A stretch of 64,000 bases of DNA from Mytilus californianus (GCF_021869535.1 NW_026262745.1:45694001-45758000), one strand, 5' to 3'. Positions 13,228-43,897 are shown, counted from the first letter of the stretch. The notes: generated from the sequence alone by a model not told the origin. Numbers and translations: made by a program.

Positions 13228-13521
13228 TTGATATTGTCAGATTCTTACTTGATATCATTAGATTTTTACTTGATATTGTTAGATTCTTACTTGATATTGC
13301 TAGATTCTTACTTGATATTGTTAGATTCTTATGTGATATTGTTAGATTCTTACTCGATATTGTCAGATTCTTACTTGATATTGTCAGATTCTAACTTGAT
13401 ATCATTAGATTTTTACTTGATATTGTTAGATTCTTACTTGATATTGCTAGATTCTTACTTGATATTGTTAGATTCTTATGTGATATTGTTAGATTCTTAC
13501 TCGATATTGTCAGATTCTTAC
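13228..13521. repeat. 21-bp minisatellite organised as two 147-bp (7 x 21) higher-order units
   Basis: Unit ttgatattgttagattcttac. The variant order in 13228-13374 is repeated in 13375-13521. Confidence 0.9.
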
Positions 13522-13584
13522 ATGATAATGTTAGATATTTATAATCTTGTTTCAAACTGTAGTGAAATTTATTTTTAATTCAAG

Positions 13585-14759: not shown

Positions 14760-14776
14760 TTAAATGTCTTTTGCAG

Positions 14777-23795: not shown

Positions 23796-24220
23796 GCATG
23801 TATATTGTCTGGTTTCGTTTATGTATAACATGATTACTCCAAAGAGGAATTAAGCAAAAATTATGGTATTTTTAGAAAACAAACTTTATACATGCATGCG
23901 CAATCACATGTAAAAAACATGTATAAAAAATATGTGATATTTTACAAAATAATATAAAAATGATTTGTTACCATGATTTACAAACCACAAATTAATTTGA
24001 AATCAAGCAAGACATTTTGCTCTCGTTAAATTGTTCGACAGCACTTTACCGCAACCCAAAGCAAAATTCACCCATAGATGCTTCACAAAGGCATTTTTTT
24101 TTACTTTTGATACACCTGAGTCCTTTTTCAATCATCATTAGTTATTTTGACTTGTTTAAGTTTGTAATTTATACAACTTTATGATGAAATATTAATAAAC
24201 AGACAGAACAGCAACAATAA

Positions 24221-24507
24221 TCAGCAGTTTGAATCTACTGGTTCCAATATTATAAGTGTTGTTGAACGCGGAGGAAGTGCACTGTCGTTGTAGTCCGCGA
24301 AAAGGTCATCGTCTGATTCAATTTGAATGTCATCCTCTATTGAAGGACTGACTCTTCGATGGAATGGATCAGCTCTTCTGACGTTTCTCATTCCACCATA
24401 CTTAAGTACTGCCACACCAGCACCTACACCGGTGACAATTACAGCGGCTGCTATGGCACCAATGACAATACCAACGGTTTGGATGGTATCGTCTGCTTCA
24501 TCGTTAG
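24221..24507 (-). CDS. Giant mucin gene, terminal exon: transmembrane helix and cytoplasmic tail
   Basis: Acceptor ttttttattcag|CT in phase 1, matching the giant exon donor. Encodes (A)NDEADDTIQT-VGIVIGAIAAAVIVTGVGAGVAVL-KYGGMRNVRR...VDSNC*, a hydrophobic 24-mer followed by basic residues. TGA at 24221-24223. Confidence 0.85.
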
Positions 24508-24896
24508 CTGAATAAAAAAAATTAATGACAGATAAAAGGTCGTGGCTATTAGATACGGATCCACCCAGCCCCACTCTCTAAACACATTATTACTTTATTT
24601 GTTACGTATAAATTTATTTACCATTTGACTTTGATTATAAACCTAACTGCAAACTTGATATAGAATTAGAAAATCATGAAGTGTTTGTAGATACAAATAC
24701 AAAATTGTACTAATGTACCATAAAGAGGACTGAGAGAGTGAACATCATAAGTGCACTACGGTGGATTTTTGAAATACTAAACTTAACATAATACTCAATT
24801 ATACATTCAAAAGTAGGATTTGATTGCTTATAGCTTTAAAACAATAAACTCTCAATAATGATTGCATTTCTGCATTAAAACCGAGGATACTTATAC

Positions 24897-25052
24897 AGAG
24901 GGGTGACACGGGGTGCTCATTTCCCAAATCCCGTTTTTACTATTTCCCACCTAACTTTTTAGTTCCTTCTTTTTTCCAGATCCCACTGTTTTACCCCCTT
25001 AATTCCACATCCCCACTTTTTATTACCCCCTATATCCCACATCCCAAAAGCG
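24897..25052. mobile_element. Small MITE with GGRGTGACACG termini and atcccac internal repeats
   Basis: gaggggtgacacg...cgtgtcactcc. An inverted related copy lies at 52968-53097. Confidence 0.65.
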
Positions 25053-25894
25053 TGTCACTCCTTATTACACATAGCAGTATCTGAGTAAAACGTAAGGTCA
25101 TTGTGACTTTTGTCTTGAAACTTTGAAAAGGATGATTGTGAATACGAAAATTTTATTTATCAAGGAATTTAGTGACAGAAAATGTGTCTGAAAAACAGAC
25201 TTAAACATACCTTCAGGATTGATTGATGATTTCATAACATTCAATGATAAACATTTCATACAAATAAGCATACGTTAGGGATAATCGTATTTCAATCGTT
25301 CGATCAAATAAAGTTTATGATGACAATATAGAAAAAATAGTTGAAGAAGGGCTAATATATGTATCAGCAATGTCTACGTTAGCGAAGGGGACCAATTAAA
25401 AAAAAAATATTTATCAAAGAATAAGGTGACCTTGACGTTTTTTGGTTTTTTTTCAGGAATATTAACTAATTAAGCTACTATCATTGATACGTTTGTTCCA
25501 AAGACGATAAAATACCAAAATAATTTCATTAATACTAGGACGAAAAAACTAAGATTTCGAATCTGTTCGTTTAAGGTAAACATCAGAGGGATCCACATAA
25601 CACAACCCTTTTCTTTACAAGGTATTAACCTAATGGAGCGATCTGATATGAAACAAATGACGATGCAATGTCAGAAAATACAATGCAGTCTGGTTATCAT
25701 TGACCCAGACAGGCCTACAGCAGCATATTTGTTTCAGTATATTTCATCACAATTTTGAAATTCTTATATATGCAACCCTTACTTGCCTTTCTAAACAAAT
25801 GAATAAGTACATATCAATTAGAAAAGAAACAACCAATAGTCTTAATAGCTCTACTTTGTATCACATAAAAGGGTTGATTAAGTAATTTGTTTAC

Positions 25895-28800
25895 CGAATT
25901 TAAGATTGGTTGAATTTATGCTGCCATTAGTATGTGTAGATGTTGGCAAATATTCTGTTGTTGTAGACACAATAGTTGTAGTGGTAGTTTCTGTTGTAGG
26001 TTGTGCAGTTGTAGTGGTAGCTTCTGTTGTCGTAGGTTGTACAGTTGTAGTGGTAGCTTCTGTTGTTTTAGACTCTACGGTTAAAATGGAAGCTTTTGTT
26101 GTTGTAGGTTCAGCAGTAGTAGTGATAGCTTCCGTTGTTGTAGGTTCTACAGTTGTGGTGATAGCTTCTGTTGGTGTAGGTTCTATAGTTGTACTTGTAG
26201 ATTCTGTTGTTGTAGGTGCAACAGTTGTAGTGATAGCTTCCGTTGTTGTAGGTTCTACAGCTGTGGTGGTAGCTTCTGTTGTTGTAGGTTGTACAGTTGT
26301 AGTGATAGCTTCCGTTGTTGTAGGTTCTACAGCTGTGGTGGTAGCTTCTGTTGTTGTAGGTTCTATAGTTGTACTTGTAGATTCTGTTGTTGTAGGTGCA
26401 ACAGATGTAGTGATAGCTTCTGTTGTTGTAGGTTGTACAGTTGTAGTGATAGCTTCCGTTGTTGTAGGTTCTACAGTTGAAGTAATATCTCCAGTTGTTG
26501 TTAGTTCTACAGTAGAAGTGGCAGCTTCTGTTGATGTATGTTCCACAGTTGTAGTGATAGTTCCTGTTGTTGTAGGTTCCACAGTTGTAGTGGTATCTTC
26601 CTTTGTTGTAGGTTCTACAGTTGTGGTTATATCTCCAGTTAATGTAGGTTCCACAGTTGTAGTAATTGATTCCGTTGTTGTAGGTTCTACAGTTGAAGTT
26701 ATATCTTCTGTTGTTGTAGGTTCTACAGTTGTAGCGGAAGCTACTGTTGTTGTAGGTTCCACAGTTGTAGTGATAGCTTCTGTTGTTGTAGGTTCTACAG
26801 TTGTAGTGATAGCTTCCGTTGTTGTAGGTTCTACAGTTGTAGTGATAGCTTCTGTTGTTGTAGGTTCTACAGTTGTAGTGATAGCTTCCGTTGTTGTAAG
26901 TTCTACAGTTGGAGTTATTTCTTCAGTTGTTGTAAGTTCTACAGTAGTAGTGGCAGCTTCGGTTGTTGTAGGTTCTACAGTTGTAGTGATAGCTTCTGTT
27001 GTTGTAGGTTCTACAGTTGTAGTGATGGCTTCTGTTGTTGTAGGTTCTACAGTTGAAGTTATATCTTCAGTTGTTGTAAGTTCTACAGTAGTAGTGGCAG
27101 CTTCGGTTGTTGTAGATTCCACAGTTGTAGTGATAGCTTCTGTTGTTGTAGGTTCTACAGTTGTAGTGATAGCTTCTGTTGTTGTAAGTTCTACAGTAGT
27201 AGTGGCAGCTGCTGTTGTTGTAGGTTCCACAGTTGTAGTGATAGTTTCTGTTGTTGTAGGTTCCACAGTTGTAGTGATATCTTCTGTTGTTGTAGGTTTT
27301 ACAGTTGTAGTGATAGCTTCCGTTGTTGTAGGTTCTACAGTTGAAATTATATCTTCAGTTGTTGTAAGTTCTACATTAGTAGTGGCAGCTTCTGTTGTTG
27401 TAGGTTCCACAGTTGTAGTGATAGCTTCTGTTGTTGTAGGTTCTACAGTTGTAGTGATAGCTTCCGTTGTTGTAGGTTCTACAGTTGAAGTTATATCTTC
27501 AGTTGTTGTAAGTTCTACAGTAGTAGTGGCAGCTCCGGTTGTTGCAAGTTCTACAGTTGTAGTGATGGCTTCCGTTGTTGTATGTTCTAAAGTTGTAGTG
27601 ATATCTTCTGTTGTTGTAGATTCAACAGTTGAAGTGACAGCTGCTGTTGTTGTAGGTTCTACAGTTGAAGTTATATCTTCAGTTGTTGTAAGTTTTACAG
27701 TAGTTGTGGCAGCTTCGGTTGTTGTAGGTTCCACAGTTGTAGTGATAGCTTCTGTTGTTGTAGGTTCTACAGTTGTAGTTATAGCTTCCGTTGTTGTAGG
27801 TTCTATAGTTGAAGTTATATCTTCAGTTGTTGTAAGTTCTACAGTAGTAGTGGCAGCTTCGGTTGTTGTTGGTTCTACATTTGTAGTGATGGCTTCCGTT
27901 GTTGTATGTTCTAAAGTTGTAGTGATATCTTCTGTTGTTGTAGATTCAACAGTTGTAGTGATAGCTTCTGTTGTTGTAGGGTCTACAGTTGAAGTTATAT
28001 CTTCAGTTGTTGTAAGTTCTACAGTAGTAGTGGCAGCTTCGGTTGTTGTAGGTTCTACAGTTGTAGTGATAGCTTCTGTTGTTGTAGGTTCCAAAGTTTT
28101 AGTGATAGCTCCTGTTGTTGTAGGTTCTACAGTTGAAGTTATATCTTCAGTTGTTGTAAGTTCTACAGAAGTAGTGGCAGCTTCGGTTGTTGTAGGTTCT
28201 ACAGTTGTAGTGATAGCTTCTGTTGTTGTTGGTTCTACAGTTGTAGTGATAGCTTCCGTTGTTGTAGGTTCTACAGTTGAAGTTATATCTTCAGTTGTTG
28301 TAAGTTCTACAGTAGTAGTGGCAGCTGCTGTTGTTGTAGGTTCCACAGTTGTAGTGATAGCTTCTGTTGTTGTAGGTTCTACAGTTGTAGTGATAGCTTC
28401 TGTTGTTGTAGGTTCTACAGTTGAAGTTATATCTTCAGTTGTTGTAAGTTCTACAGTAGTAGTGGCAGCTTCGGTTGTTGTAGATTCCACAGTTGTAGTG
28501 ATAGCTTCTGTTGTTGTAGGTTCTACAGTTGTAGTGATAGCTTCTGTTGTTGTAGGTTCTACAGTTGAAGTTATATCTTCAGTTGTTGTAATTTCTACAG
28601 TAGTAGTGGCAGCTTCGGTTGTTGTAGGTTCTAGAGTTGTAGTGATAGCTTCTGTTGTTGTTGGTTCTACAGTTGTAGTGATAGCTTCCATTGTTGTAGG
28701 TTCTACAGTTGAAGTTATATCTTCAGTTGTTGTAAGTTCTACAGTAGTAGTGGCAGCTTCGGTTGTTGTAGGTTCCACAGTTGTAGTGATAGCTTCTGTT

Positions 28801-31800
28801 GTTGTAGGTTCTAAAGTTGTAGTGATATCTTCTGTTGTTGTAAGTTCTACAGTAGTAGTGGCAGCTGCTGTTGTTGTAGGTTCTACAGTTGTAGTGATAG
28901 CTTCTGTTGTTGTTGGTTCTACAGTTGTAGTGATAGCTTCCGTTGTTGTAGGTTCTACAGTTGAAATTATATCTTCAGTTGTTGTAAGTTCTACATTAGT
29001 AGTGGCAGCTTCTGTTGTTGTAGGTTCCACAGTTGTAGTGATAGCTTCTGTTGTTGTAGGTTCTACAGTTGTAGTGATAGCTTCCGTTGTTGTAGGTTCT
29101 ACAGTTGAAGTTATATCTTCAGTTGTTGTAAGTTCTACAGTAGTAGTGGCAGCTCCGGTTGTTGTAAAATCTACAGTTGTAGTGATGGCTTCCGTTGTTG
29201 TATGTTCTAAAGTTGTAGTGATATCTTCTGTTGTTGTAGATTCAACAGTTGAAGTGACAGCTGCTGTTGTTGTAGGTTCTACAGTTGAAGTTATATCTTC
29301 AGTTGTTGTAAGTTTTACAGAAGTTGTGGCAGCTTCGGTTGTTGTAGGTTCCACAGTTGTAGTGATAGCTTCTGTTGTTGTAGGTTCTACAGTTGTAGTT
29401 ATAGCTTCCGTTCTTGTAGGTTCTACAGTTGAAGTTATATCTTCAGTTGTTGTAAGTTCTACAGTAGTAGTGGCAGCTTCGGTTGTTGTTGGTTCTACAT
29501 TTGTAGTAATGGCTTCCGTTGTTGTATGTTCTAAAGTTGTAGTGATATCTTCTGTTGTTGTAGATTCAACAGTTGTAGTGATAGCTTCTGTTGTTGTAGG
29601 GTCTACAGTTGAAGTTATATCTTCAGTTGTTGTAAGTTCTACAGTAGTAGTGGCAGCTTGGGTTGTTGTAGGTTCTACAGTTGTAGTGATAGCTTCTGTT
29701 GTTATAGGTTCCAAAGTTTTAGTGATAGCTCCTGTTGTTGTAGGTTCTACAGTTGTAGTGATAGCTTCTGTTGTTGTACGTTCTACAGTTGAAGTTATAT
29801 CTTCAGTTGTTGTAAGTTCTACAGAAGTAGTGGCAGCTTCGGTTGTTGTAGGTTCTACAGTTGTAGTGATAGCTTCTGTTGTTGTAGGTTCTACAGTTGA
29901 AGTTATATCTTCAGTTGTTGTAATTTCTACAGTAGTAGTGACAGCTTCGGTTGTTGTAGGTTCTAGAGTTGTAGTGATAGCTTCTGTTGTTGTTGGTTCT
30001 ACAGTTGTAATGATAGCTTCCATTGTTGTAGGTTCTACAGTTGAAGTTATATCTTCAGTTGTTGTAAGTTCTACAGTAGTAGTGGCAGCTTCGGTTGTTG
30101 TAGGTTCCACAGTTGTAGTGATAGCTTCTGTTGTTGTAGGTTCTAAAGTTGTAGTGATATCTTCTGTTGTTGTAGATTCAACAGTTGTAGTGACAGCTGC
30201 TGTTGTTGTAGGTTCTACAGTTGAAGTTGTATCTTCAGTTGTTGTAATGTCTAAAGTAGTAGTGGCAGCTTCGGTGGTTGTAGGTTCCACAGCTGTAGTG
30301 ATAGCTTCTGTTGTTTTAGGTTCTACAGTTGTAGTGATAGCATCCGTTGTTGTAGGTTCTACAGATGAAGATATATCTTCAGTTGTTGTAAGTTCTACAG
30401 TAGTAGTGGCAGCTGCTGTTGTTGTAGGTTCCACAGTTGTAGTGATATCTTCTGTTGTTGTAGGTTCTACAGTTGTAGTGATAGCTTCCGTTGTTGTAGG
30501 ATCTACAGTTATAATTATATCTTCAGTTGTTGTAGGTTCCACAGTTGTAGTGATAGCTTCAGTTGTTGTAAGTTCTACATTAGTAGTGGCAGCTTTGGTT
30601 GTTGTAGGTTCTACAGTTGTAGTGATGGCTTCCATTGTTGTATGTTCTAAATTTGTAGTGATATCTTCTGTTGTTGTAGGTTCTACAGTTGTAGTGATAG
30701 CTTCTGTTGTAGGTTCCACAGTTGTAGTGATAGCTTCCGTTGTTGTAGGTTCTACAGTTGAAGTTATATCTCCAGTTGTTGTAAGTTCTACAGTAGTAGT
30801 GGCAGCTTCGGTTGTTGTTGGTTCTACAGTTGTAGTGATGGCTTCCGTTGTTGTATGATCTGAAGTTGTAGTGATATCTTCTGTTGTTGTAGATTCTACA
30901 GTTGAAGTTATATCTTCATTTGTTGTAAGTTTTACAGTAGTAGTGGCAGCTTCGGTTGTTGTAGGTTCCACAGTTGTACTGATAGCTTCTGTTGTTGTTG
31001 GTTCTACAGTTGTAGTGATAGCTTCTGTTGTTGAAGGTTCCACAGTTGTAGTGATTGATTCCGTTGTTGTAGGTTTTACAGTTGTAGTTATACCTTCTGT
31101 TGTTGTAGGTTCTACAGTTGTAGTCAAAGCTTCTGTTGTTGTAGGTTCCACAGTTGTAGTGATATCTTCTGTTGTTGTAGGTTCTACAGTTGTAGTGGTA
31201 TCTTCAGTTGTTGTAAGTTCTACAGTAGTAGTGGCAGCTTCGGTTGTTGTAGGTTCCACAGTTGTAGTGATAGCTTCTGTTGTTGTAGGTTCTACAGTTG
31301 TAGTGATAGCTTGTGTTGTTGTAGGTTCTACAGTTGAAGTTATATCTTCAGTTGTTGTAAGTTCTACAGTAGTAGTGGCAGCTTTGGTTGTTGTAGGTTC
31401 CACAGTTGTAGTGATTGCTTCCGTTGTTGTAGGTTCTGAAGTTGTAGTGATATCTTCTGTTGTTGTAGATTCAACAGTTGTAGTGACAGCTTCCGTTGTT
31501 GTAGGTTCTACAGTTGAAGTTATATGTTCAGTTGTTGTAAGTTCTAAAGTAGTAGTGGCAGCTTCGGTTGTTGTAGGTTCCACAGTTGTAGTGATAGCTT
31601 CTGTTGTTGTAGGTTCCACAGTTGGAGTGATAGCTTCCGTTGTTGTAGGTTCTACAGTTGAAGTTATATCTTCAGTTGTTGTAAGTTCTATAGTAGAAGT
31701 GGCAGCTTCGGTTGTTGTAGGTTCCACAGTTGTAGTGATAGCTTCTGTTGTTGTAGGTTCTACATTTGTAGTGATAGCTTCCGTTGTTGTAGGTTCTACA

Positions 31801-34800
31801 GTTGTAGTGATGGCTTCTGTTGTTGTAGATTCTACAGTTGTAGTGATAGCTTCTAATGTTGGAGATTCCACACTTGTAGTGATAGCTTCTGATGTTGAAG
31901 GTTCCACAGTTGTAGTGATAGCTTCTGATGTTGAAGGTTCCACAGTTGTAGTGATAGCTTCTGATGTTGAAGGTTCCACAGTTGTAGTGATTGATTCCGT
32001 TGTTGTAGGTTTTACAGTTGTAGTTATACCTTCTGTTGTTGTAGGTTCTACAGTTGTTGTCAAAGCTTCTGTTGTTGTAGGTTCCAAAGTTGTAGTGATA
32101 GATTCTGTTGTTGAAGATTCCACAGTTGTAGTGATAGCTTCCGTTGTTGTAGATTCTACAGTTGAAGTTATATCTTCAGTTGTTGTAAGTTTTACAGTAG
32201 TAGTGGCAGCTTCAGTTGTTTTAGGTTCCACAGTTGTACTGATAGCTTCTGTTGTTGTTGGTTCTACAGTTGTAGTGATAGCTTGTGTTGTTGTAGGTTC
32301 TACAGTTGAAGTTATATCTTCAGTTGTTGTAATTTCTACAGTAGTAGTGGCAGCTTTGGTTGTTGTAGGTTCCACAGTTGTAGTGATGGCTTCCGTTGTT
32401 GTAGGTTCTGAAGTTGTAGTGATATCTTCTGTTGTTGTAGATTCAACAGTTGTAGTTACAGCTGCTGTTGTTGTAGGTTTTACAGTTGAAGTTATATCTT
32501 CAGTTGTTGTATGTTCTAAAGTAGTAGTGGCAGCTTCGGTTGTTGTAGGTTCCACAGTTGTAGTGATAGCTTCCGTTGTTGTAGGTTCTACAGTTGTAGT
32601 GATAGCTTCCGTTGTTGTAGATTCTACAGTTGAAGTTATATCTTCAGTTGTTGTAAGTTCTACAGTAGTAGTGGCAGCTTCGGTTGTTGTAGGTTCTACA
32701 GTTGTAGTGATAACTTCAGTTGTTGTAGGTTCTACAGTTGAAGTTATATCTCCAGCTGTTGTTAGTTCTAAAGTAGTAGTGGCAGCTTCGGTTGTTGTAG
32801 GTTTCACAGTTGTAGTGATAGCTTCTGTTGTTGTAGGTTCTACAGTTGTAGTGATAGCTTCCGTTGTTGTAGGTTCTACAGTTGTAGTGATGGCTTCTGT
32901 TGTTGTAGATTCTACAGTTGTAGTGATAGCTTCTGATGTTGGAGATTCCACACTTGTAGTGATAGCTTCTGATGTTGAAGGTTCCACAGTTGTAGTGATA
33001 GCTTCTGATGTTGAAGGTTCCACAGTTGTAGTGATTGATTCCGTTGTTGTAGGTTTTACAGTTGTAGTTATACCTTCTGTTGTTGTAGGTTCTACAGTTG
33101 TAGTCAAAGCTTCTGTTGTTGTAAATCCCAAAGTTGTAGTGATAGATTCTGTTGTTGAAGATTCCACAGTTGCAGTGATATCTTCTGTTGTTGTAGATTC
33201 TACAGTTGAAGTTATATCTTCAGTTGTTGTAAGTTTTACAGTAGTAATGGCAGCTTCGGTTGTTTTAGGTTCCACAGTTGTACTGATAGCTTCTGTTGTT
33301 GTTGGTTCCACAGTTGTAGTGATAGCTTCTGATGTTGAAGGTTCCACAGTTGTAGTGATAGCTTCTGATGTTGAAGGTTCCACAGTTGTAGTGATTGATT
33401 CCGTTGTTGTAGGTTTTACAGTTGTAGTTATACCTTCTGTTGTTGTAGGTTCTACAGTTGTAGTCAAAGCTTCTGTTGTTGTAGGTTCCAAAGTTGTAGT
33501 GATAGATTCTGTTGTTGAAGATTCCACAGTTGTAGTGATAGCTTCCGTTGTTGTAGATTCTACAGTTGAAGTTATATCTTCAGTTGTTGTAAGTTTTACA
33601 GTAGTAGTGGCAGCTTCGGTTGTTTTAGGTTCCACAGTTGTACTGATAGCTTCTGTTGTTGTTGGTTCTACAGTTGTAGTGATAGCTTCTGTTGTTGTAG
33701 GTTCTACAGTTGAAGTTGTATCTTCAGTTATTGTAAGTTCTACAGTAGTAGTGGCAGCTTCGGTTGTTGTAGGTTCCACAGTTGAAGTAATAGCTTCTGT
33801 TGGAGGTTCTACAGTTGTAGTGATAGCTTGTGTTGTTGTAGGTTCTACAGTTGAAGTTATATCTTCAGTTGTTGTAATTTCTACAGTAGTAGTGGCAGCT
33901 TTGGTTGTTGTAGGTTCCACAGTTATAGTGATGGCTTCCGTTGTTGTAGGTTCTGAAGTTGTAGTGATATCTTCTGTTGTTGTAGATTCAACAGTTGTAG
34001 TTACAGCTGCTGTTGTTGTAGGTTTTACAGTTGAAGTTATATCTTCAGTTGTTGTATGTTCTAAAGAAGTAGTGGCAGCTTCGGTTGTTGTAGGTTCCAC
34101 AGTTGTAGTGATAGCTTCCGTTGTTGTAGGTTCTACAGTTGTAGTGATAGCTTCCGTTGTTGTAGATTCTACAGTTGAAGTTATATCTTCAGTTGTTGTA
34201 AGTTCTACAGTAGTAGTGGCAGCTTCGGTTGTTGTAGGTTCTACAGTTGTAGTGATAGCTTCCGTTGTTGTAGGTTCTACAGTTGAAGTTATATCTCCAG
34301 CTGTTGTTAGTTCTAAAGTAGTAGTGGCAGCTTCGGTTGTTGTAGGTTTCACACTTGTAGTGATAGCTTCTGATGTTGAAGGTTCCACAGTTGTAGTGAT
34401 AGCTTCTGATGTTGAAGGTTCCACAGTTGTAGTGATTGATTCCGTTGTTGTAGGTTTTACAGTTGTTGTTATACCTTCTGTTGTTGTAGGATCTAAAGTT
34501 GTAGTCAAAGCTTCTGTTGTTGTAGGTCCTAAAGTTGTAGTGATAGATTCTGTTGTTGAAGATTCCACAGTTGCAGTGATATCTTCTGTTGTTGTAGATT
34601 CTACAGTTGAAGTTATATCTTCAGTTGTTGTAATTTTTACAGTAGTAATGGCAGCTTCGGTTGTTTTAAGTTCCACAGTTGTACTGATAGCTTCTGTTGT
34701 TGTTGGTTCTACAGTTGTAGTGATAGCTTCTGTTGTTGTAGGTTCTACAGTTGAAGTTGTATCTTCAGTTGTTGTAAGTTCTACAGTAGTAGTGGCAGCT

Positions 34801-37800
34801 TCGGTTGTTGTAGGTTCCACAGTTGTAGTGATAGCTTCTGTTGTAGGTTCTACAGTTGTAGTGATAGCTTGTGTTGTTGTGGGTTCTACAGTTGAAGTTA
34901 TATCTTCAGTTGTTGTAATTTCTACAGTAGTAGTGGCAGCTTTGGTTGTTGTAGGTTCAACAGTTGTAGTGATGGCTTCCGTTGTTGTAGGTTCTGAAGT
35001 TGTAGTGATATCTTCTGTTGTTGTAGATTCAACAGTTGTAGTTACAGCTGCTGTTGTTGTAGGTTTTACAGTTGAAGTTTTATCTTCAGTTGTTGTATGT
35101 TCTAAAGTAGTAGTGGCAGCTTCGGTTGTTGTAGGTTCCACAGTTGTAGTGATAGCTTCCGTTGTTGTAGGTTCTACAGTTGTAGTGATAGCTTCCGTTG
35201 TTGTAGATTCCACAGTTGAAGTTATATCTTCAGTTGTTGTAGGTTCCACAGTTGTAGTGATAGCTTCTGTTGTTGTAGGTTCCACAGTTGTAGTGATAGC
35301 TTCCGTTGTTGTAGGTTCTACAGTTGAAGTTATATCTTCAGTTGTTGTAAGTTCTATAGTAGAAGTGGCAGCTTCGGTTGTTGTAGGTTCCACAGTTGTA
35401 GTGATAGCTTCTGTTGTTGTAGGTTCTACAGTTGTAGTGATAACTTCCGTAGTTGTAGGTTCTACAGTTGTAGTGATGGCTTCTGTTGTTGTAGATTCTA
35501 CAGTTGTAGTGATAACTTCTGATGTTGGAGATTCCACACTTGTAGTGATAGCTTCTGATGTTGAAGGTTCCACAGTTGTAGTGATAGCTTCTGATGTTGA
35601 AGGTTCCACAGTTGTAGTGATAGCTTCTGATGTTGAAGGTTCCACAGTTGTAGTGATTGATTCCGTTGTTGTAGGTTTTACAGTTGTAGTTATACCTTCT
35701 GTTGTTGTAGGTTCTACAGTTGTAGTCAAAGCTTCTGTTGTTGTAGGTTCCAAAGTTGTAGTGATAGATTCTGTTGTTGAAGATTCCACAGTTGTAGTGA
35801 TATCTTCTGTTGTTGTAGATTCTTCAGTTGAAGTTATATCTTCAGTTGTTGTAAGTTTTACAGTAGTAGTGGCAGCTTCGGTTGTTTTAGGTTCCACAGT
35901 TGTACTGATAGCTTCTGTTGTTGTTGGTTCTACAGTTGTAGTGATAGCTTCTGTTGTTGTAGGTTCTACAGTTGAAGTTGTATCTTCAGTTGTTGTAAGT
36001 TCTACAGTAGTAGTGGCAGCTTCGGTTGTTGTAGGTTCCACAGTTGTAGTGATAGCTTCTGTTGTAGGTTCTACAGTTGTAGTGATAGCTTGTGTTGTTG
36101 TAGGTTCTACAGTTGAAGTTATATCTTCAGTTGTTGTAATTTCTACAGTAGTAGTGGCAGCTTTGGTTGTTGTAGGTTCCACAGTTGTAGTGATGGCTTC
36201 CGTTGTTGTAGGTTCTGAAGTTGTAGTAATATCTTCTGTTGTTGTAGATTGAACAGCTGTAGTTACAGCTGCTGTTGTTGTAGGTTTTACAGTTGAAGTT
36301 ATATCTTCAGTTGTTGTATGTTCTAAAGTAGTAGTGGCAGCTTCTGTTGTTGTAGGTTCCACAGTTGTAGTGATAGCTTCCGTTGTTGTAGGTTCTACAG
36401 TTGTAGTGATAGCTTCCGTTGTTGTAGATTCTACAGTTGAAGTTATATCTTCAGTTGTTGTAAGTTCTACAGTAGTAGTGGCAGCTTCGGTTGTTGTAGG
36501 TTCTACAGTTGTAGTGATAGCTTCCGTTGTTGTAGGTTCTACAGTTGAAGTTATATCTCCAGCTGTTGTTAGTTCTAAAGTAGTAGTGGCAGCTTCGGTT
36601 GTTGTAGGTTTCACAGTTGTAGTGATAGCTTCTGTTGTTGTAGATTCAACAGTTGTAGTGACAGCTTTCGTTGTTGTAGGTTCTACAGTTGAAGTTATAT
36701 CTTCAGTTGTTGTAAGTTCTACAGTAGTAGTGGCAGCTTCGGTTGTTGTAGGTTCCACAGTTGTAGTGATAGCTTCTGTTGTTGTAGGTTCTACAGTTGT
36801 AGTGATAGCTTCCGTTGTTGTAGGTTCTACAGTTGAAGTTATATCTTCAGTTGTTGTAAGTTCTACAGTAGTAGTGGCAGCTTCGGATGTTGTAAGTTCT
36901 ACAGTTGTAGTGTTGGCTTCCGTTGTTGTATGTACTGAAGTTGTAGTGATACCTTCTGTTGTTGTAGATTCAACAGTTGTAGTGACAGCTGCTGTTGTTG
37001 TAGGTTCTACAGTTGAAGTTATATCTCCAGTTGTTGTTAGTTCTAAAGTAGTAGTGGCAGCTTCGTTTGTTGTAGGTTCCACAGTTGTAGTGATAGCTTC
37101 TGTTGTTGTAGGTTCTACAGTTGAAGTTATATCTTCAGTTGTTGTAAGTTCTACAGTAGTAGTGGCAGCTTCGGTTGTTGTAGGTTCCACAGTTGTAGTG
37201 ATTGATTCCGTTGTTGTAGGTTTTACAGTTGTAGTTTTACCTTCTGTTGATGTAGTTTCTACAGTTGTAGTCAAAGCTTCTGTTGATGTAGGTTCCTTAC
37301 TTGTAGTGATAGCTTCCGTTGTTGTAGGTTCTACAGTTGAAGTTATATCTCCAGTTGTTGTTAGTTCTAAAGTAGTGGTGGCAGCTTCGGTTGTTGTAGG
37401 TTCCACAGTTGTAGTGATAGCTTCTGTTGTTGTAGATTCAACAGTTGTACTGACAGCTTTCGTTGTTGTAGGTTCTACAGTTGAAGTTATATCTTCAGTT
37501 GTTGTAAGTTCTAAAGTAGTAGTGGCAGCTTCGGTTGTTATAGGTTCCACAGTTGTAGTGATAGCTTCTGTTGTTGTAGATTCAATAGTTATAGTGACAG
37601 CTTTCGTTGTTGTAGGTTCTACAGTTGAAGTTATATCTTCAGTTTTTGTTAGTTCTACAGTAGTAGTGGCAGCTTCGTTTGTTGTAGGTTCTACAGTTGT
37701 AGTGATAGGTTCTGTTGTTGTAGGTTCTACAGTTGTAGTGATAGCTTCCGTTGTTGTAGGTTCTACAGTTGAAGTTATATCTCCAGTTGTTGTTAGTTCT

Positions 37801-40800
37801 AAAGTAGTAGTGGCAGCTTCGGTTGTTGTAGGTTCCACAGTTGTAGTGATAGCTTCTGTTGTTGTAGATTCAACAGTTGTAGTTATATCTTCAGTTGTTG
37901 TAAGTTCTACAGTAGTAGTGGCAGCTTCGTTTGTTGTAGGTTCTACAGTTGAAGTGATAGCTTCCGTTGTTGTAGGTTCTACAGTTGAAGTTATATCTTC
38001 AGTTGTTGTAAGTTCTACAGTAGTAGTGGCAGCTTCGGATGTTGTAAGTTCTACAGTTGTAGTGATGGCTTCCGTTGTTGTATGTACTGAAGTTGTAGTG
38101 ATACCTTCTGTTGTTGTAGATTCAACAGTTGTAGTGACAGCTGCTGTTGTTGTAGGTTCTACAGTTGAAGTTATATCTCCAGTTGTTGTTAGTTCTAAAG
38201 TAGTAGTGGTAGCTTCGGTTGTTGTAGGTTCCACAGTTGTAGTGATAGCTTCTGTTGTTGTAGGTTCCTCAGGTGTAGTGATAGCTTCCGTTGTTGTAGG
38301 TTCTACAGTTGAAGTAATATCTTCAGTTGTTGTAAGTTCTACAGTAGTAGTGGCAGCTTCGGTTGTTGTAGGTTCCACAGTTGTAGTGATAGCTTCTGTT
38401 GTTGTAGGTTCTACAGTTGAAGTTATATCTTCAGTTGTTGTAAGTTCTACAGTAGTAGTGGCAGCTTCCGTTGTTGTTGGTTGTACAGTTGTAGTGATGG
38501 CTTCCGTTGTTGTATGTTCTAAAGTTGTAGTGATATCTTCTGTTGTTGTAGATTCAACAGTTGTAGTGACAGCTGCTGTTGTTGTCGGTTCTACAGCTGA
38601 AGTTATATCTTCAGTTGTTGTAAGTTCTAAAGTAGTAGTGGCAGTTTCGGTTGTTGTAGGTTCCAGAGTTGTAGTGATAGCTTCTTTTGTTGTAGGTTCT
38701 ACAGTTGTAGTGATAGCTTCTGTTGTTGTAGGTTCTACAGTTGAAGTTATATCTTCAGTTGTTGTAAGTTCTACAGTAGAAGTGGCAGCTTCGGTTGTTG
38801 TAGGTTCCACAGTTGTAGTGATAGCTTCTGTTGTTGTGGGTTCTACATTTGTAGTGATAGCTTCCGTTGTTGTAGGTTCTGCAGTTGTAGTGATGGCTTC
38901 TGTTGTTTTAGAGTCTACAGTTGTAGTGATAGCTTCTGATGTTGAATATTCCACAGTTGTAGTGATAGCTTCCGTTGTTGTAGGTTCTACAGTTGAAGTT
39001 ATATCTTCAGTTGTTGTAAGTTCTACAGTAGAAGTGGCAGCTTCGAAGGTTGTAGGTTCCACAGTTGTTGTAAGTTCTACAGTAGAAGTGGCAGCTTCGA
39101 AGGTTGTAGGTTCCACAGTTGTAGTGATAGCTTCTGTTGTTGTAGGTTCTACAGTTGTAGTGATAGCTTCTGTTGTTGTAGATTCTACAGTTGTAGTGAT
39201 AGCTTCTGATGTTGAAGATTCCACAGTTGTAGTGATAGCTTCTGATGTTGAAGGTTCCACAGTTGTAGTGATAACTTCTGATGTTGAAGGTTCCACAGTT
39301 GTAGTGATAGCTTTTGATGTTGAAGGTTCTACAGTTGTAGTGATAGCTTCCGTTGTTGTAGGTTCTACAGTTGTAGTGATGGCTTCTGTTGTTGTAGATT
39401 CTACAGTTGTAGTGATAGCTTCTGTTGTTGTAGGTTCTACAGTTGTAGTGATAGCTTCCGTTGTTGTAGGTTCTACAGTTGTAGTGATGGCTTCTGTTGT
39501 AGTAGATTCCACAGTTGTAGTGATAGCTTCTGATGTTGAAGATTCCACAGTTGTAGTGATAGCTTCTGATGTTGAAGGTTCCACAGTTGTAGTAATAGCT
39601 TCCGTTGTTGTAGGTTCTACAGTTGAAGTCATATCTTCAGTTGTTGTAAGTTCTACAGTAGAAGTGGCAGCTTCGGTTGTTGTAGGTTCCACAGTTGTAG
39701 TGATAGCTTCTGTTGTTGTAGGTTCTACAGTTGTAGTGATAGCTTCCGTTGTTGTAGGTTCTACAGTTGTAGTGATGGCTTCTGTTGTTTTAGATTCTAC
39801 AGTTGTAGTGATAGCTTCTGATGTTGAAGATTCCACAGTTGTAGTGATAGCTTCCGTTGTTGTAGGTTCTACAGTTGAAGTTATATCTTCAGTTGTTGTA
39901 AGTTCTACAGTAGAAGTGGCAGCTTCGGTTGTTTTAGGTTCCACAGTTGTAGTGATAGCTTCTGTTGTTGTAGGTTCTACAGTTGTAGTGGTAGCTTCCG
40001 TTGTTGTAGGTTCTACAGTTGTAGTGATGGCTTCTGTTGTTGTAGATTCTACAGTTGTAGTGATAGCTTCTGATGTTGAAGATTCCACAGTTGTAGTGAT
40101 AGCTTCTGATGTTGAAGGTTCCACAGTTGTAGTGATAGCTTCTGATGTTGAAGGTTCCACAGTTGTAGTGATAGCTTCTGATGTTGAAGGTTCTACAGTT
40201 GTAGTGATAGCTTCCGTTGTTGTAGGTTCTACAGTTGTAGTGATGGCTTCTGTAGTTGTAGATTCTACAGTTGTAGTGATAGCTTCTGTTGTTGTAGGTT
40301 CTACAGTTGTAGTGATAGCTTCCGTTGTTGTAGGTTCTACAGTTGTAGTGATGGCTTCTGTTGTAGTAGATTCCACAGTTGTAGTGATAGCTTCTGATGT
40401 TGAAGATTCCACAGTTGTAGTGATAGCTTCTGATGTTGAAGGTTCCACAGTTGAAGTGATAGCTTCTGATGTTGAAGATTCCACAGTTGTAGTGATAGCT
40501 TCTGATGTTGAAGGTTCCACAGTTGTAGTGATTGATTCCGTTGTTGAAGGTTTTACAGTTGTATTTATACCTTCTGTTGTTGTAGGTTCTACAGTTGTAG
40601 TCAAAGCTTCTGTTGATGTAGGTTCCACAGTTGTAGTGATAGATTCTGTTGTTGAAGATTCCACAGTTGTAGTGATAGCTTCTGATGTTGAAGGTTCCAC
40701 AGTTGTAGTGATAGCTTCTGATGTTGAAGGTTCCACAGTTGTAGTGATAGCTTCCGTTGTTGTAGGTTCTACAGTTGAAGTTATATCTTCAGTTGTTGTA

Positions 40801-42532
40801 AGTTCATCAGTAGAAGTGGCAGCTTCGGTTGTTGTAGGTTCCACAGTTGTGGTGATAGCTTCTGTTGTTGTAGGTTCTACAGTTGTAGTGATAGATTCCG
40901 TTGTTGTAGGTTCTACAGTTGTAGTGATGGCTTCTGTTGTTTTAGATTCTACAGTTGTAGTGATAGCTTCTGATGTTGAAGATTCCATAGTTGTAGTGAT
41001 AGCTTCCGTTGTTGTAGGTTCTACAGTTGAAGTTATATCTTCAGTTGTTGTAAGTTCTACAGTAGAAGTGGCAGCTTCGGTTGTTGTAGGTTCCACAGTT
41101 GTAGTGATAGCTTCTGTTGTTGTAGGTTCTACAGTTGTAGTGATAGCTTCCGTTGTTGTAGGTTCTACAGTTGTAGTGATGGCTTCTGTTGTTGTAGATT
41201 CTACAGTTGTAGTGATAGCTTCTGATGTTGAAGATTCCACAGTTGTAGTGATAGCTTCTGATGTTGAAGGTTCCGAAGTTGTAGTGATAGCTTCTGATGT
41301 TGAAGGTTCCACAGTTGTAGTGATAGCTTCTGATGTTGAAGGTTCCACAGTTGTAGTGATTGATTCCGTTGTTGTAGGTTTTACAGTTGTAGTTATACCT
41401 TCTGTTGTTGTAGGTTCTACAGTTGTAGTCAGAGCTTCTGTTGATGTAGGTTCCACAGTTGTAGTGATAGATTCTGGTGTTGTAAAATCTACAGTTGTAG
41501 TGATAGATTCTGTTGTTGTAAAATCTACAGTTGAAGTTATATCTTCTGTTGTTGTAATTTCTACAGTTGAAGTAGAAGCTTCTGTTGTTGTATATTCAAC
41601 TGTTGTAGTGATAGCTTCTGTTGTTGCAGGTTCAAGAGTTGTAGTGAAGACATCTGTTGATGTATTTTCAACAGTTGAAGTGATGGCATCTGTTGTTGTA
41701 GGTTCTACAGTTGTTGTGATAGCTTCTGTTGTTCTAGGTTTCACAGTTGTAGTGATAGCCTCTGTTGTTGTAAATTCAACAGTTGTAGTGGTATCTTCCG
41801 TTGTTGTAGTTTCTACCGTTTTAGATGTTTCTTGTGTTGTTGTAGGTTCAACATTTGTAATGATAGCTTCCGTTGTTGTTAGTTCCACAGTAGTAGTGGC
41901 AGCATTTGTTGTAGGTTCGACAGTTGAAGTGATAGTCTCTGTTGTTGTAGGTTCAGCAGTTGTTATGGTATCTTCCGTTGTTGTAGGTTCTACAGTTGTA
42001 ATGATAACTTCAGTTGTTGTAGGTTCAACAGTTGTAGTGATGGTATCTGTTGTTGTAGGTGGTTCTACAGTTGTAGTTCTATCTTCTGTAGTTGAAGGTT
42101 CTACAGTTGTAACGGTAACTTCAGTTGTTGTTGGTTCAACAGTTGTAATGATAGCTTCCGTTTTAAGTTGAATAGTAGTAGTGGCAGCTTCTATTGTTGT
42201 TGTTTCCACAGTTGTAGTGATAGCTTCTGTTGTTGTATGTTCAACAGTTTTAGTGGTATCTTCTGTTGTTGTAGGTTCTACAGTGGTAGTGATAACTTCC
42301 GATATTGTAGGTTCAACAGTTGTAGTGTTAGCTTCTACTGTTGTGGGTTCAACAGTTGTAGAGATGGCATCCGTTGTAGTAGGTTCTACAGTTGTAGTGT
42401 TATAATTTGTTATTGTAGGTTCCACAGTTGTAGTGATAGCTTCCGTTGTTGTAGTTGTAGTTTCTGTTGTATTTTCCGTAGATACACTACATGAAATCGA
42501 TAGGATCAGTATGAGCCTTGTCCATAGAGTAT
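25895..42532 (-). CDS. Giant mucin gene, 16,638-bp exon: end of signal peptide plus ~460 x 12-aa VEPTTTEAITTT repeats
   Basis: The stop-free frame (ORF track 25878-42425) extends to acceptor cttcctttcag|42532 with TLWTRLILILSISCSVST. Donor TTC G|gtaaac at 25894. Length is divisible by 3, phase 1-1. 36-bp unit tgttgttgtaggttctacagttgtagtgatagcttc. Confidence 0.93.
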
Positions 42533-43462
42533 CTGAAAGGAAGCAGTAGATAAAGTGTTACTTGAACATTAGTGGTGTGTAACGAACGAATGTCATTTAA
42601 TATTTTGTTTAAAAATCAATGATATCATTTTAATTTTATGATCGAAAAACTTCTTGTGTTAGTTTTATTGTATCACATTAGATTTTGGTTATCTATATAA
42701 TGGCAGACAGGACATTATGATATATTTAAAATGAAAATGTAGTCAGTAGACAATATATTTATAATATTGTTGTGGGTGCAGAGTTATCTTTCTTAGATTT
42801 GTAAATAAGTCAGCGTCGTCAGCGACCATTCAACTTGTGTGGGTGGGGTTCTCAGCACAGACTGTTGTATCCAATTCTAATCAAATACAAACTATTTTTT
42901 CAATAACAAAAAGTAACAAGATATTATTCATTTAGAAAATCAATTTTCTTCTTTTTAATTTATTAATTTTCAAAAGAAACAAACTATTGTTTCAATACTT
43001 CCATTAGAGGTTATTTTTTCCCAAGAAATTAAGTATCAATCAAATCATTTACAAATAACATGACCCCCCCCCCCCCTCCCCTTCACCGAAACAAAATAAA
43101 AAAACTGAATGGTCGCGGTGCCTAAAATCAATGATGTGATGTGCTTCATCGTGTTGCATTGTCAGGTGAAACGCCTGATATGGTATAATTTATAAATTTA
43201 TCTTTGATTTTTGAATGGTATACATCAATTAGTGGTGGATCCAGGTGGGGGTGTTTTGTGTAGGGACATATGGTTGGAACGCCCCCCCCTTTTCTATATG
43301 ACTTGCATGTGCTGGAATCCCCTTTTTTTTTAAAGAATGGCTGGAATTAGACAGCCACCCCAAAACATAATGAAACTACAAAATGACATCTTAAAGTCAT
43401 AATAGAAAGGAGACAACAGCAGGTTAACAATAACGATTTGACAGATATTATTCTGACTACTT

Positions 43463-43652
43463 AGATATAAGAAGATGTGGTATGAGTGCCAATGAGACAA
43501 CTCTCCATCCAAGTCACAATTTGTAAAAGTAAACCATTATAGGTCAAAGTACGGCCTTCAACACGGAGCATTGGCTCACACCGAACAGCAAGCTATAAAG
43601 GGCCCCAAAAATGACCAACGGTCTAATCTATATAAAAAACGAGAAACGAGAA
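43463..43652 (-). mobile_element. SINE 3' portion, young copy, abutting the mucin start-exon donor
   Basis: Same family as 18863-19075, with an internal ~35-bp deletion. Confidence 0.75.
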
Positions 43653-43667
43653 CTTACAATGTTTTAC

Positions 43668-43683
43668 CCAATGTGTTCGACAT
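43668..43683 (-). CDS. Giant mucin gene, probable start exon (MSNTL+D)
   Basis: cagcATG TCG AAC ACA TTG G|gtaaaa, phase 1, gives MSNTLDTLWTRLILILSISCSVST, a plausible signal peptide. Upstream acceptor aatttacag|43719. Alternative ATG 43715 with donor 43657 is also in frame. Confidence 0.55.
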
Positions 43684-43857
43684 GCTGGATGGAATCTAAG
43701 AAACGTCTTCGCCATTCATCTGTAAATTACTGAAAGTAAAGTAATGTTAATTAATTAATTAAAAGAATGACAAATTGAATGAACATAAATAAAGAGATTT
43801 GCGGGGTACGAAATCACCAAGCGACACAGAAAACAGCCCCCGAATAAAAAAAACACC

Positions 43858-43897
43858 AAAACAAACAAACAAACAAACAAACAAACAAACAAACAAA
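43858..43897. repeat. (AAAC)n microsatellite
   Basis: Direct reading. Confidence 0.9.

What the first reader, a model, noticed from the sequence alone, without database searches (positions are those of the whole stretch)
24221..43683. Minimalist giant membrane mucin: ~5,650 aa with no folded extracellular domain
The model 43683-43668 + 42532-25895 + 24507-24221 totals 16,941 nt (5,646 aa plus stop) with consistent phases. The ectodomain is signal peptide, ~5,500 aa of Thr/Glu repeats and a ~35-aa stalk. It has no Cys after the signal peptide and none of the SEA, EGF, NIDO/AMOP or vWD domains that characterise vertebrate membrane mucins. At about 0.25 nm per residue for O-glycosylated mucin chains it would extend over a micrometre. 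About two acidic residues per 12 and very few basic ones make it polyanionic even before glycosylation, suggesting a glycocalyx, anti-adhesive or Ca-binding role. The tail has a juxtamembrane YGGM (YxxM/Yxx-phi) motif.
Basis: partly seen in the sequence, partly recalled or inferred. Interest (0 to 1): 0.7.

Follow-up and report, generated by a model that had tools for sequence, protein, structure and literature searches.

The report
Giant mussel membrane mucin-like gene
A mussel gene most likely encodes a 5,600-residue cell-surface protein made almost wholly of about 460 threonine- and glutamate-rich 12-residue repeats, held in the membrane by one helix with a conserved inner tail; this build is already known from human MUC21 and MUC22, and no RNA evidence could be obtained.

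Summary
The sequence observation holds. A 16.6-kb minus-strand exon (25895-42532) is open for 5,545 codons. It consists of about 459 in-frame TTEAITTTVEPT-type repeats with no Pfam domain. It ends in phase 1 at a GT donor. A phase-1 exon 1.4 kb downstream (24221-24507) encodes a membrane helix and a 60-residue tail.

That tail exon has four relatives in other mussel-associated DNA. All have a phase-1 acceptor and invariant PPRSTTLI and terminal SxC motifs, and the tail dN/dS is about 0.13. It is therefore a real, conserved coding exon.

The best reading (about 0.55) is a membrane-tethered, polyanionic, O-glycosylated mucin-like protein.

- The architecture is not new: MUC21 and MUC22 have the same layout without a SEA domain.
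- The 16-nt first exon is not unique. A second phase-compatible start (43715-43658, GTAAGT donor) exists.
- YGGM is not conserved.
- AlphaFold2 folds the repeats into a confident 12-residue beta-solenoid. A second array segment gave a different, inconsistent model, and AlphaFold2 is documented to over-predict such folds for repeats. I keep this as a rival.
- No annotated full-length relative was found.

The parts
43668..43683 (-).
   Evidence: Sequence read and phase check. Weakest part of the model, because only 16 nt are coding.
43658..43715 (-). Alternative first coding exon (ATG at 43715, 58 nt, donor GTAAGT at 43657-43652), also phase 1. It gives a longer basic region ahead of the same hydrophobic core.
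   Evidence: Enumeration of ATG-to-GT candidates; sequence. An in-frame stop at 42560-42558, with no ATG before the exon 2 acceptor, shows that some upstream exon is required.
42533..43667 (-).
   Evidence: No open stretch in it resembles a domain.
25895..42532 (-). Giant exon 2: 16,638 nt, 5,545 whole codons, with no stop
42480..42532 (-). Signal-peptide core at the start of exon 2 (..TLWTRLILILSISCSVS, then TENTT)
   Evidence: Translation. An 11-residue window has mean hydropathy 2.65. Small residues at -1 and -3. No dedicated signal-peptide predictor was available.
25953..42454 (-). 36-nt (12-aa) tandem array of about 459 units, consensus TTEAITTTVEPT, with a weak 144-nt higher order and recently duplicated blocks of 32-45 units
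   Evidence: 720-nt blocks are up to 98.8% identical to another block.
25895..25997 (-). Non-repeat stalk at the exon 2 end (..TTTTTIVSTTTEYLPTSTHTNGSINSTNLKF) with two N-x-S/T sequons. The donor G|GTAAAC follows at 25894.
   Evidence: If unspliced, the frame stops 17 nt later, at 25880-25878.
24508..25894 (-). Intron 2 (1,387 nt) with a T-rich tract and CAG acceptor
   Evidence: No domain-like open stretch.
24221..24507 (-). Terminal coding exon 3 (phase 1; 94 whole codons + TGA)
   Evidence: Homologues P0001-P0004 all sit behind a phase-1 AG acceptor.
24404..24478 (-). Transmembrane helix TVGIVIGAIAAAVIVTGVGAGVAVL
   Evidence: Hydropathy. An acidic segment lies outside (NDEADD) and a basic one inside (KYGGMRNVRR). 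There is a weak Pfam Insulin_TMD resemblance only.
24224..24403 (-). Cytoplasmic tail of 60 residues, with invariant RR, PS, F.D, PPRSTTLI, E and terminal S.C
   Evidence: Alignment A2. dN 0.030 and dS 0.231 against locus L001.
23800..24220 (-). Probable 3' UTR, conserved with locus L001
   Evidence: 87% identity over aligned bases, against 74% for the intron flank

Best explanation
This is a real mussel protein-coding gene for a type I membrane protein of about 5,650 residues.

Shown:
- A 5,545-codon exon consists of about 459 Thr/Glu-rich 12-residue repeats, has no other domain, and is kept open and in frame.
- A downstream exon encodes a membrane helix and a 60-residue tail. That tail is conserved, under purifying selection, in several mussel-associated genomes.
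- Every relative of that exon has a phase-1 acceptor that matches the phase-1 end of the giant exon.

Inferred:
- The exons are spliced as modelled. A short upstream exon supplies the start codon for a cleavable signal peptide.
- In the Golgi, polypeptide GalNAc-transferases load the Thr/Ser (half of all residues) with O-glycans. The chain becomes an extended, strongly anionic bottle-brush of the order of a micrometre.
- At an epithelial surface it would act as a steric, hydrating, anti-adhesive and cation-binding glycocalyx layer.
- The conserved tail (RR.xPS, acidic run-F.D[FY], PPRSTTLI, C-terminal [DE]SxC) would tie it to sorting, cytoskeletal or signalling partners.
- The array evolves by unequal exchange of blocks of 32-45 units, so its length is probably polymorphic.
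For: - Frame and junction arithmetic.
- 0 stops in 5,545 codons, against 4 or more in every other frame; 0 TAA against 14 CAA and 58 AAA among GAA neighbours.
- All indels are whole codons.
- No Pfam family in exon 2.
- S+T 50.6%, P 5.5%, net charge -871.
- Signal-peptide-like and TM hydropathy peaks with positive-inside flank.
- Four tail-exon homologues found by exhaustive HMMER search (E 4e-32 to 6e-6), all behind phase-1 acceptors.
- 19 invariant tail columns.
- Tail dN/dS about 0.13, and 3' UTR more conserved than the intron.
- No other long ORF on the minus strand between 17.3 kb and 64 kb.
- Recently duplicated blocks.
- Mucin-type O-glycosylation machinery and core-1 glycans exist in molluscs including bivalves: PMC6272458.
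- The same domain-less layout is an accepted transmembrane mucin in humans: MUC21, PMC11199685.
Against: - No RNA evidence of any kind.
- No transcript-derived or annotated protein containing the tail or the N-terminus was found.
- The first exon is ambiguous.
- Phase agreement between exons 2 and 3 has a 1 in 3 chance expectation.
- In the one homologous contig with 1.39 kb of upstream sequence (L005), no Thr-rich exon is seen.
- Pro content is low and V+I+A+L is 24%. The charge-hydropathy position is exactly borderline (0.469 against 0.470).
- AlphaFold2 predicts a confident beta-solenoid for the repeats. If real, it would shield Thr from Golgi glycosylation.
Confidence: 0.55

Rival explanations
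1. Folded repeat rod. The 12-residue units stack as coils of a two-sheet beta-solenoid. In the model ITTTV is a strand, which would put the two outer Thr on one face and I, T/S and V on the other; coordinates were not inspected, so which face points inward is my inference. The ectodomain would then be a stiff, roughly 0.2-micrometre rod with Thr ladders and Glu ladders, possibly Ca-loaded, and largely unglycosylated. It could be adhesive, mineral- or ice-interacting, or amyloid-like, rather than a mucin brush.
For: - AlphaFold2 with a pseudo-alignment of 18 array segments gives mean pLDDT 97.7 and pTM 0.90, with strands at strict 12-residue period.
- Structural neighbours are beta-solenoids: curli CsgA Z 26, MpAFP Z 15.
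- The most conserved repeat positions are T1, T6 and T8 (94-97%). The residue between T6 and T8 is T or S, as in T-x-T ladders.
- T+V+I make up 59% of residues and Pro is low.
Against: [quoted passage not shown]
- The degenerate N-terminal 240 residues gave a different topology, including a 68-residue 'strand'. The five models ranged from pLDDT 42 to 81.
- Two Glu per 12-residue coil would stack as uncompensated charge ladders (net -871).
- There are no Cys. The solved 12-residue-coil beetle antifreeze protein relies on disulfides (my own knowledge).
- Foldseek found no solved structure at E <= 0.001.
- The pseudo-alignment rows are paralogous repeats, not independent homologues.
Confidence: 0.13
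2. Secreted, not anchored. Exon 2 is not joined to exon 3. The protein ends ..NLKFGKQIT at the stop 17 nt past the proposed donor and is a secreted Thr-rich mucin. Exon 3 belongs to another transcript, or is used only in a minor isoform.
For: - The frame closes at 25880-25878 if the donor is not used.
- The donor G|GTAAAC lacks the +5 G.
- Phase agreement alone is a 1 in 3 event.
- There is no RNA evidence.
- L005 shows no Thr-rich exon within 1.39 kb upstream of its tail exon.
Against: - Exon 3 and all its homologues start in phase 1 with only 8-20 extracellular residues. They therefore need an upstream exon that ends in phase 1 and supplies a signal peptide and ectodomain.
- Exon 2 is the only coding-looking minus-strand sequence upstream, at 1.4 kb.
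- No polyadenylation signal follows the in-intron stop closely.
Confidence: 0.12
3. Incomplete model. The gene is a membrane mucin, but transcripts carry further exons, either 5' of 43715 or as cassettes in the introns. These could add a folded domain, so it would not be 'minimalist'.
For: - The first exon is not uniquely defined. About 100 ATG-to-GT phase-1 candidates lie within 4.4 kb upstream.
- Small exons cannot be excluded without RNA data.
Against: - No open stretch of 35 or more codons in either intron, or in the 3.3 kb upstream, looks like a domain.
- No ORF of 70 aa or more with coding character lies between 43 and 64 kb.
- The hydrophobic signal core sits at the very start of exon 2, so any domain exon would have to lie before the signal peptide. 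That is unlikely.
Confidence: 0.1
4. Non-functional. This is an expanded minisatellite or a dead gene that happens to be open because the unit lacks near-stop codons. It is not expressed as protein.
For: - Only GAA codons are one step from a stop, so openness is partly built in.
- The antisense frame is also nearly open, with 4 stops.
- No annotated or transcript-derived relative was found.
Against: - 0 TAA against 14 CAA at 815 GAA codons.
- Every indel is a multiple of 3 over 16.5 kb.
- A signal-peptide-like start and canonical splice sites flank the array.
- The adjoining tail exon is under purifying selection.
Confidence: 0.07

Closest known systems
Human MUC21 (epiglycanin) and MUC22, transmembrane mucins without a SEA domain
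   Same: The layout is the same: signal peptide, tandem-repeat domain, short stem, one TM helix, short cytoplasmic tail (MUC21: PMC11199685). The repeats are Thr/Ser-rich, Pro-poor and contain acidic residues. AlphaFold2 also folds MUC22 repeats into a doubtful beta-solenoid (PMC11795689).
   Different: No sequence relationship was detected. The exhaustive tail search found only four mussel-associated fragments. From my own knowledge, the array here is roughly three to ten times longer and more acidic, and MUC21 units are 15 residues against 12 here. The cytoplasmic tail belongs to a separate, bivalve-restricted family.
SEA-type transmembrane mucins (MUC1, MUC3, MUC12, MUC13, MUC16, MUC17)
   Same: A giant single-exon variable tandem-repeat ectodomain, one TM helix and a tail under 100 residues (PMC11985918). 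From my own knowledge, the length class is that of MUC12 and MUC17.
   Different: There is no SEA domain and no EGF module. Hence there is no autoproteolytic two-subunit design or force-sensitive shedding site.
MUC4-type mucins (NIDO-AMOP-vWD), including invertebrate 'mucin-4-like' proteins
   Same: Long Thr-rich arrays. Such proteins (oyster, sea cucumber, acorn worm) were the only long hits to the repeat region.
   Different: Those hits are compositional only and carry EGF, NIDO or SEA Pfam domains. This gene has none.
Leukocyte and endothelial sialomucins (CD43, PSGL-1, endomucin, podocalyxin family)
   Same: Type I proteins whose ectodomain is mostly a disordered, anionic O-glycosylated stalk. 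They have a conserved tail that binds adaptors, and the podocalyxin family ends in a PDZ ligand (my own knowledge). Here the C-terminal [DE]SxC is invariant.
   Different: They are 10-40 times shorter, and anionic through sialic acid rather than Glu. No homology was found. The PDZ-type role of SxC-COOH is speculative.
Beta-solenoid ice-binding and ice-nucleating proteins and curli (TmAFP, MpAFP, bacterial INP, CsgA)
   Same: Short tandem coils with T-x-T ladders. The AlphaFold2 model of the repeats resembles these folds.
   Different: There are no Cys for the 12-residue coil. There are stacked Glu, and the prediction is inconsistent across the array. The gene is eukaryotic and membrane-anchored, and no sequence similarity was found.

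Membership tests
Mucin / mucin-like protein (operational definition) | Large central exon of tandem repeats rich in Ser/Thr (with Pro) | tested here: met
   About 459 units of 12 aa in one exon. S+T 50.6%, P 5.5%. Pro is at the low end.
Mucin / mucin-like protein (operational definition) | Entry into the secretory pathway (signal peptide) | tested here: inconclusive
   A hydrophobic core LILILSISCSV lies at the exon 2 start, with small -1/-3 residues. The start codon lies in an unverified upstream exon with two options. No signal-peptide predictor was available.
Mucin / mucin-like protein (operational definition) | Dense O-GalNAc glycosylation of the repeats | not testable with these tools
   Needs glycoproteomics or lectin blotting. 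The machinery exists in molluscs (PMC6272458).
SEA-type transmembrane mucins | SEA domain next to the membrane | tested here: not met
   Pfam scan of all of exon 2 and of exon 3 found no SEA domain. The stalk is about 35 residues.
MUC4-type mucins | NIDO, AMOP and vWD domains, and EGF modules | tested here: not met
   No Pfam family was found. There is no Cys in the ectodomain.
MUC21/MUC22-type (domain-less) transmembrane mucin, architecture | Signal peptide, tandem repeats, stem, TM helix and cytoplasmic tail, with nothing else | tested here: inconclusive
   Met by the exon model. The exon joins are not verified by RNA.
MUC21/MUC22-type transmembrane mucin, homology | Detectable sequence relationship of the non-repeat parts | tested here: not met
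   HMMER of the TM/tail exon against 1.84 billion representatives gave 4 hits, all short fragments on contigs under 2 kb from shotgun or metagenome data; two of the samples are traceable to mussel habitats, and none carries a name.
Bivalve TM-tail exon family (defined here) | Phase-1 terminal exon: short ecto segment, TM helix, RR.xPS, acidic run-F[AG]D[FY], PPRSTTLI, [DE]SxC-COOH | tested here: met
   Alignment A2 with 19 invariant columns. Phase-1 acceptors in L001, L002, L003 and L005.
12-residue-coil beta-helical antifreeze proteins (TmAFP type) | T-x-T ladder on a flat sheet, plus a disulfide-bonded core | tested here: not met
   A T6-x-T8 pattern is present and conserved. There are no Cys in the array, and the predicted fold is not reproducible across the array.

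The most novel reading that the evidence does not exclude
The repeats really fold. The array would be about 460 stacked 12-residue beta-solenoid coils, forming a membrane-anchored rod some 0.2 micrometre long with continuous Thr ladders and Glu (Ca-binding) ladders. That would be by far the longest beta-solenoid known. In an intertidal, freeze-tolerant mussel it could organise water or ice (ice nucleation or ice binding), or calcium mineral, at the cell surface. An antifreeze glycoprotein activity was reported in Mytilus edulis in 1976 and never assigned to a gene (cited in bioRxiv 10.1101/2021.08.30.458284). A Thr-rich O-glycosylated array could equally be the source of such an activity.
Probability: 0.07. 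Interest if true: 0.85.

Novelty: new member of a known kind. Interest (0 to 1): 0.35.

Why it matters
Transmembrane mucins outside vertebrates are usually searched for through SEA or NIDO/AMOP/vWD domains, so a domain-less one is invisible to those screens. None of the searches run here returned a full-length or named relative.

If expressed, this gene would give molluscs a MUC21/22-like glycocalyx component that arose independently. It comes with a new, conserved cytoplasmic tail family (PPRSTTLI, terminal SxC) that could be used to find partners and orthologues.

It is also a natural test case for whether AlphaFold2's confident beta-solenoids for Thr-rich repeats are ever real. The practical importance is modest until expression, tissue and glycosylation are shown.

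Tried and rejected
No junction could be tested.
2. Word search with the first 40 residues of exon 2, to catch transcript fragments showing the exon 1 join: blank.
3. Word search for long relatives (3,050-9,700 aa) with the last 546 residues of exon 2: only compositional hits to EGF/NIDO/SEA/REJ proteins of echinoderms, hemichordates, an oyster and a horseshoe crab. I rejected these as homologues.
4. JGI metagenome scan with the tail alignment: 374 pattern matches, none confirmed.
5. Profile of the tail against PDB sequences: only Vpu at E 0.92, which is noise. Pfam gave Insulin_TMD at E 0.09, a generic TM resemblance.
6. Peptide strings in the paper library: none.
7. Findings index by sequence: blank.
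8. Codon-position variability could not separate the sense frame from the nearly open antisense frame, because their third positions coincide. I used stops, flanks and splice sites instead.
9. Short linear-motif readings of the tail (YxxM, DPF, dileucine, FFAT, LIR) were rejected because the residues are not conserved among the five sequences.
10. The sources of L001 and L005 were traced to a Mytilus galloprovincialis study and to seawater over a cold-seep mussel bed. With dS 0.28, L001 may be a paralogue or an orthologue from another species. This is undecided.

Full report
**What is there**

On the minus strand, one open frame runs for 5,545 whole codons between 42530 and 25896. Tandem Repeats Finder describes it as a single 36-nt array, 25953-42454, of about 459 copies at 81-84% matches, with a weak 144-nt higher order. 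Translated, it is an unbroken series of TTEAITTTVEPT-type units. A wrap-around alignment puts 5,494 residues in register, with about ten indel events, all of whole codons.

Composition of the model: T 44%, E 14.6%, V 7.8%, A 7.6%, I 6.7%, S 5.5%, P 5.5%. The net charge of the exon 2 ectodomain is -871. Pfam finds no family in any part of exon 2 or exon 3. Blocks of 720 nt are up to 98.8% identical to blocks 32-45 units away. The array therefore grows by recent segmental duplication and is probably length-polymorphic.

**Is it coding, and in which frame?**

- The Thr frame has 0 stops. The best antisense frame has 4, and the other four frames have 132-1,259.
- The unit has few near-stop codons, so openness alone is weak evidence. 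But at the 815 GAA codons the one-step products AAA (58) and CAA (14) occur while TAA never does.
- No indel breaks the frame in 16.5 kb.
- Third codon positions of the sense frame and the nearly open antisense frame coincide, so position-specific variability cannot separate them. The flanks decide.

**The flanks**

Exon 2 begins right after a pyrimidine tract and AG (42534-42533). It opens with ..TLWTRLILILSISCSVS, then TENTT, which is a signal-peptide-like core. Upstream in frame there is a stop at 42560-42558 and no ATG, so a 5' exon is needed.

So does a second option: ATG 43715, 58 nt, with the consensus donor GTAAGT after 43658. The two differ only in the residues ahead of the hydrophobic core, so the mature protein is the same. 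The first exon is unresolved.

At the 3' end the repeats decay into a stalk of about 35 residues with two N-glycosylation sequons. The exon ends G|GTAAAC in phase 1. 1,387 nt downstream, after a T-rich tract and CAG, a phase-1 exon (24507-24221) encodes:

- ANDEADDTIQ;
- a 25-residue hydrophobic helix;
- KYGGMRNVRR;
- a 50-residue acidic tail ending ..PPRSTTLIILEPVDSNC-stop.

**Is the tail exon real?**

An exhaustive HMMER search of 1.84 billion representatives with the 94-residue exon peptide found four relatives and nothing else: P0001-P0004, E 4e-32 to 6e-6, 94-47% identity (P0001 was also found). All lie on short genomic contigs.

- One is from shotgun data of a Mytilus galloprovincialis study (PMC11729891).
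- One is from seawater over a cold-seep mussel bed (PMC9357000).

In the four contigs I read (L001, L002, L003, L005; L004 was not read), the exon is preceded by an AG acceptor in phase 1 and starts with only 8-20 extracellular residues. Nineteen columns are invariant: RR, PS, D, F.D, D, PPRSTTLI, E and the terminal S.C.

Against L001 the tail has dN 0.030 and dS 0.231. The 3' UTR is 87% identical and the intron flank 74%. This is a conserved terminal coding exon. It needs an upstream exon that ends in phase 1 and provides a signal peptide and ectodomain. Exon 2 is the only candidate in the neighbourhood.

It is not a conserved motif.

**What could not be shown**

No junction, expression level or tissue is known.

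Searches for protein fragments containing the N-terminus and for long relatives of the repeat and stalk gave nothing beyond compositional matches. A JGI metagenome scan was blank. The only homologous contig with much upstream sequence (L005, 1.39 kb) shows no Thr-rich exon. That may only mean a longer intron.

The joined protein was translated only in a local script to check phases and was not sent to any search, fold or look-up.

**Folded or not?**

The claim 'no folded extracellular domain' was tested with AlphaFold2.

- 240 residues of near-perfect repeats, with 17 other array segments as alignment, gave mean pLDDT 97.7 and pTM 0.90. The model is a 12-residue-period beta-solenoid in which ITTTV is a strand, EP a turn, TT a short strand and TEA a turn. 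Its structural neighbours are generic beta-solenoids such as curli CsgA and a bacterial Ca-dependent antifreeze protein.
- The degenerate N-terminal 240 residues, run as a single sequence, gave a different and physically odd topology: 9-residue strands and one 68-residue 'strand'. The five models ranged from pLDDT 42 to 81.

Pratt et al. (PMC11795689) show that AlphaFold2 assigns high confidence to unrealistic beta-solenoids for 41% of random perfect repeats. They single out human mucin 22 as a natural case, and they note stacked uncompensated acidic residues as a warning sign. Here two Glu per coil would stack.

On the other side, Pro is low, T+V+I is 59%, the charge-hydropathy position is exactly on the boundary, and T6 and T8 are the best conserved positions with T/S between them.

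I treat the solenoid as a probable artefact and keep it as a rival at about 0.13.

**Most likely mechanism**

A type I membrane protein enters the ER through a cleaved signal peptide. In the Golgi it is loaded with O-GalNAc glycans on the Thr/Ser that make up half its residues. Mollusc GalNAc-transferase, T-synthases and core-1 glycans are documented, and O-glycosylation in Mytilus digestive cells is complete by the cis-Golgi (PMC6272458).

It is then displayed as an extended, Glu-rich polyanionic brush. At about 0.25 nm per residue (a textbook figure, my own knowledge), 5,500 residues give about 1.4 micrometres.

Such a layer would hydrate, lubricate, exclude particles and microbes, and bind divalent cations at an epithelial surface. 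The conserved tail implies regulated sorting, anchoring or signalling. All steps after 'type I membrane protein' are inferred.

**Comparison with known systems**

It works like a transmembrane mucin. It fails the membership tests for the SEA type and the MUC4 type (no SEA, EGF, NIDO, AMOP or vWD).

Its architecture equals that of MUC21 (tandem repeat, stem, TM, tail; PMC11199685) and MUC22, and resembles the sialomucins. There is no detectable homology to any of them. Mucins are defined by build rather than descent. I therefore file it as a new member of a known kind, with a new bivalve-restricted tail family. It is not a new category.

**Verdict**

- Confidence in 'membrane-tethered mucin-like glycoprotein' is 0.55.
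- Interest is 0.35.
- The most novel reading not excluded is a genuine giant Thr-ladder beta-solenoid at the surface of a freeze-tolerant intertidal animal (probability about 0.07).

Noticed in passing
window 14764-17283 (+): An 839-aa single-exon ORF with a P-loop-like N-terminal half and ankyrin-like repeats in the C-terminal half. It is the STAND-ankyrin gene already noted by the scan (s1-333285) and is unrelated to the mucin-like gene.
   Followed up: no
window 13228-13578 (+): An open stretch made of a short tandem repeat that translates as LILLDSY.. units. This is probably a minisatellite rather than a gene.
   Followed up: no
window 43847-43938: An (AAAC)n / 12-nt microsatellite lies about 130-220 nt upstream of the candidate first exons, in the putative promoter region.
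   Followed up: no
window 43719-43696 (-): A 7-codon upstream ORF (ATG AAT GGC GAA GAC GTT TCT TAG) overlaps the alternative start at 43715. It could matter for start-site choice.
   Followed up: no
window 24974-25046: A 32-nt tandem repeat of 2.4 copies inside intron 2.
   Followed up: no
L001 580-670: Compared with the window's 3' UTR, the related locus has about 90 extra bases made of repeated 'ataactaat..gattgaaaaaggactc' units. This is a small UTR tandem expansion.
   Followed up: no
L001 versus window 24224-24505: dS of 0.28 between the window and a contig from a Mytilus galloprovincialis sample is high for orthologues within the edulis complex. Mussels may carry more than one gene with this tail, or the window is from a more distant Mytilus species.
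   Followed up: partly
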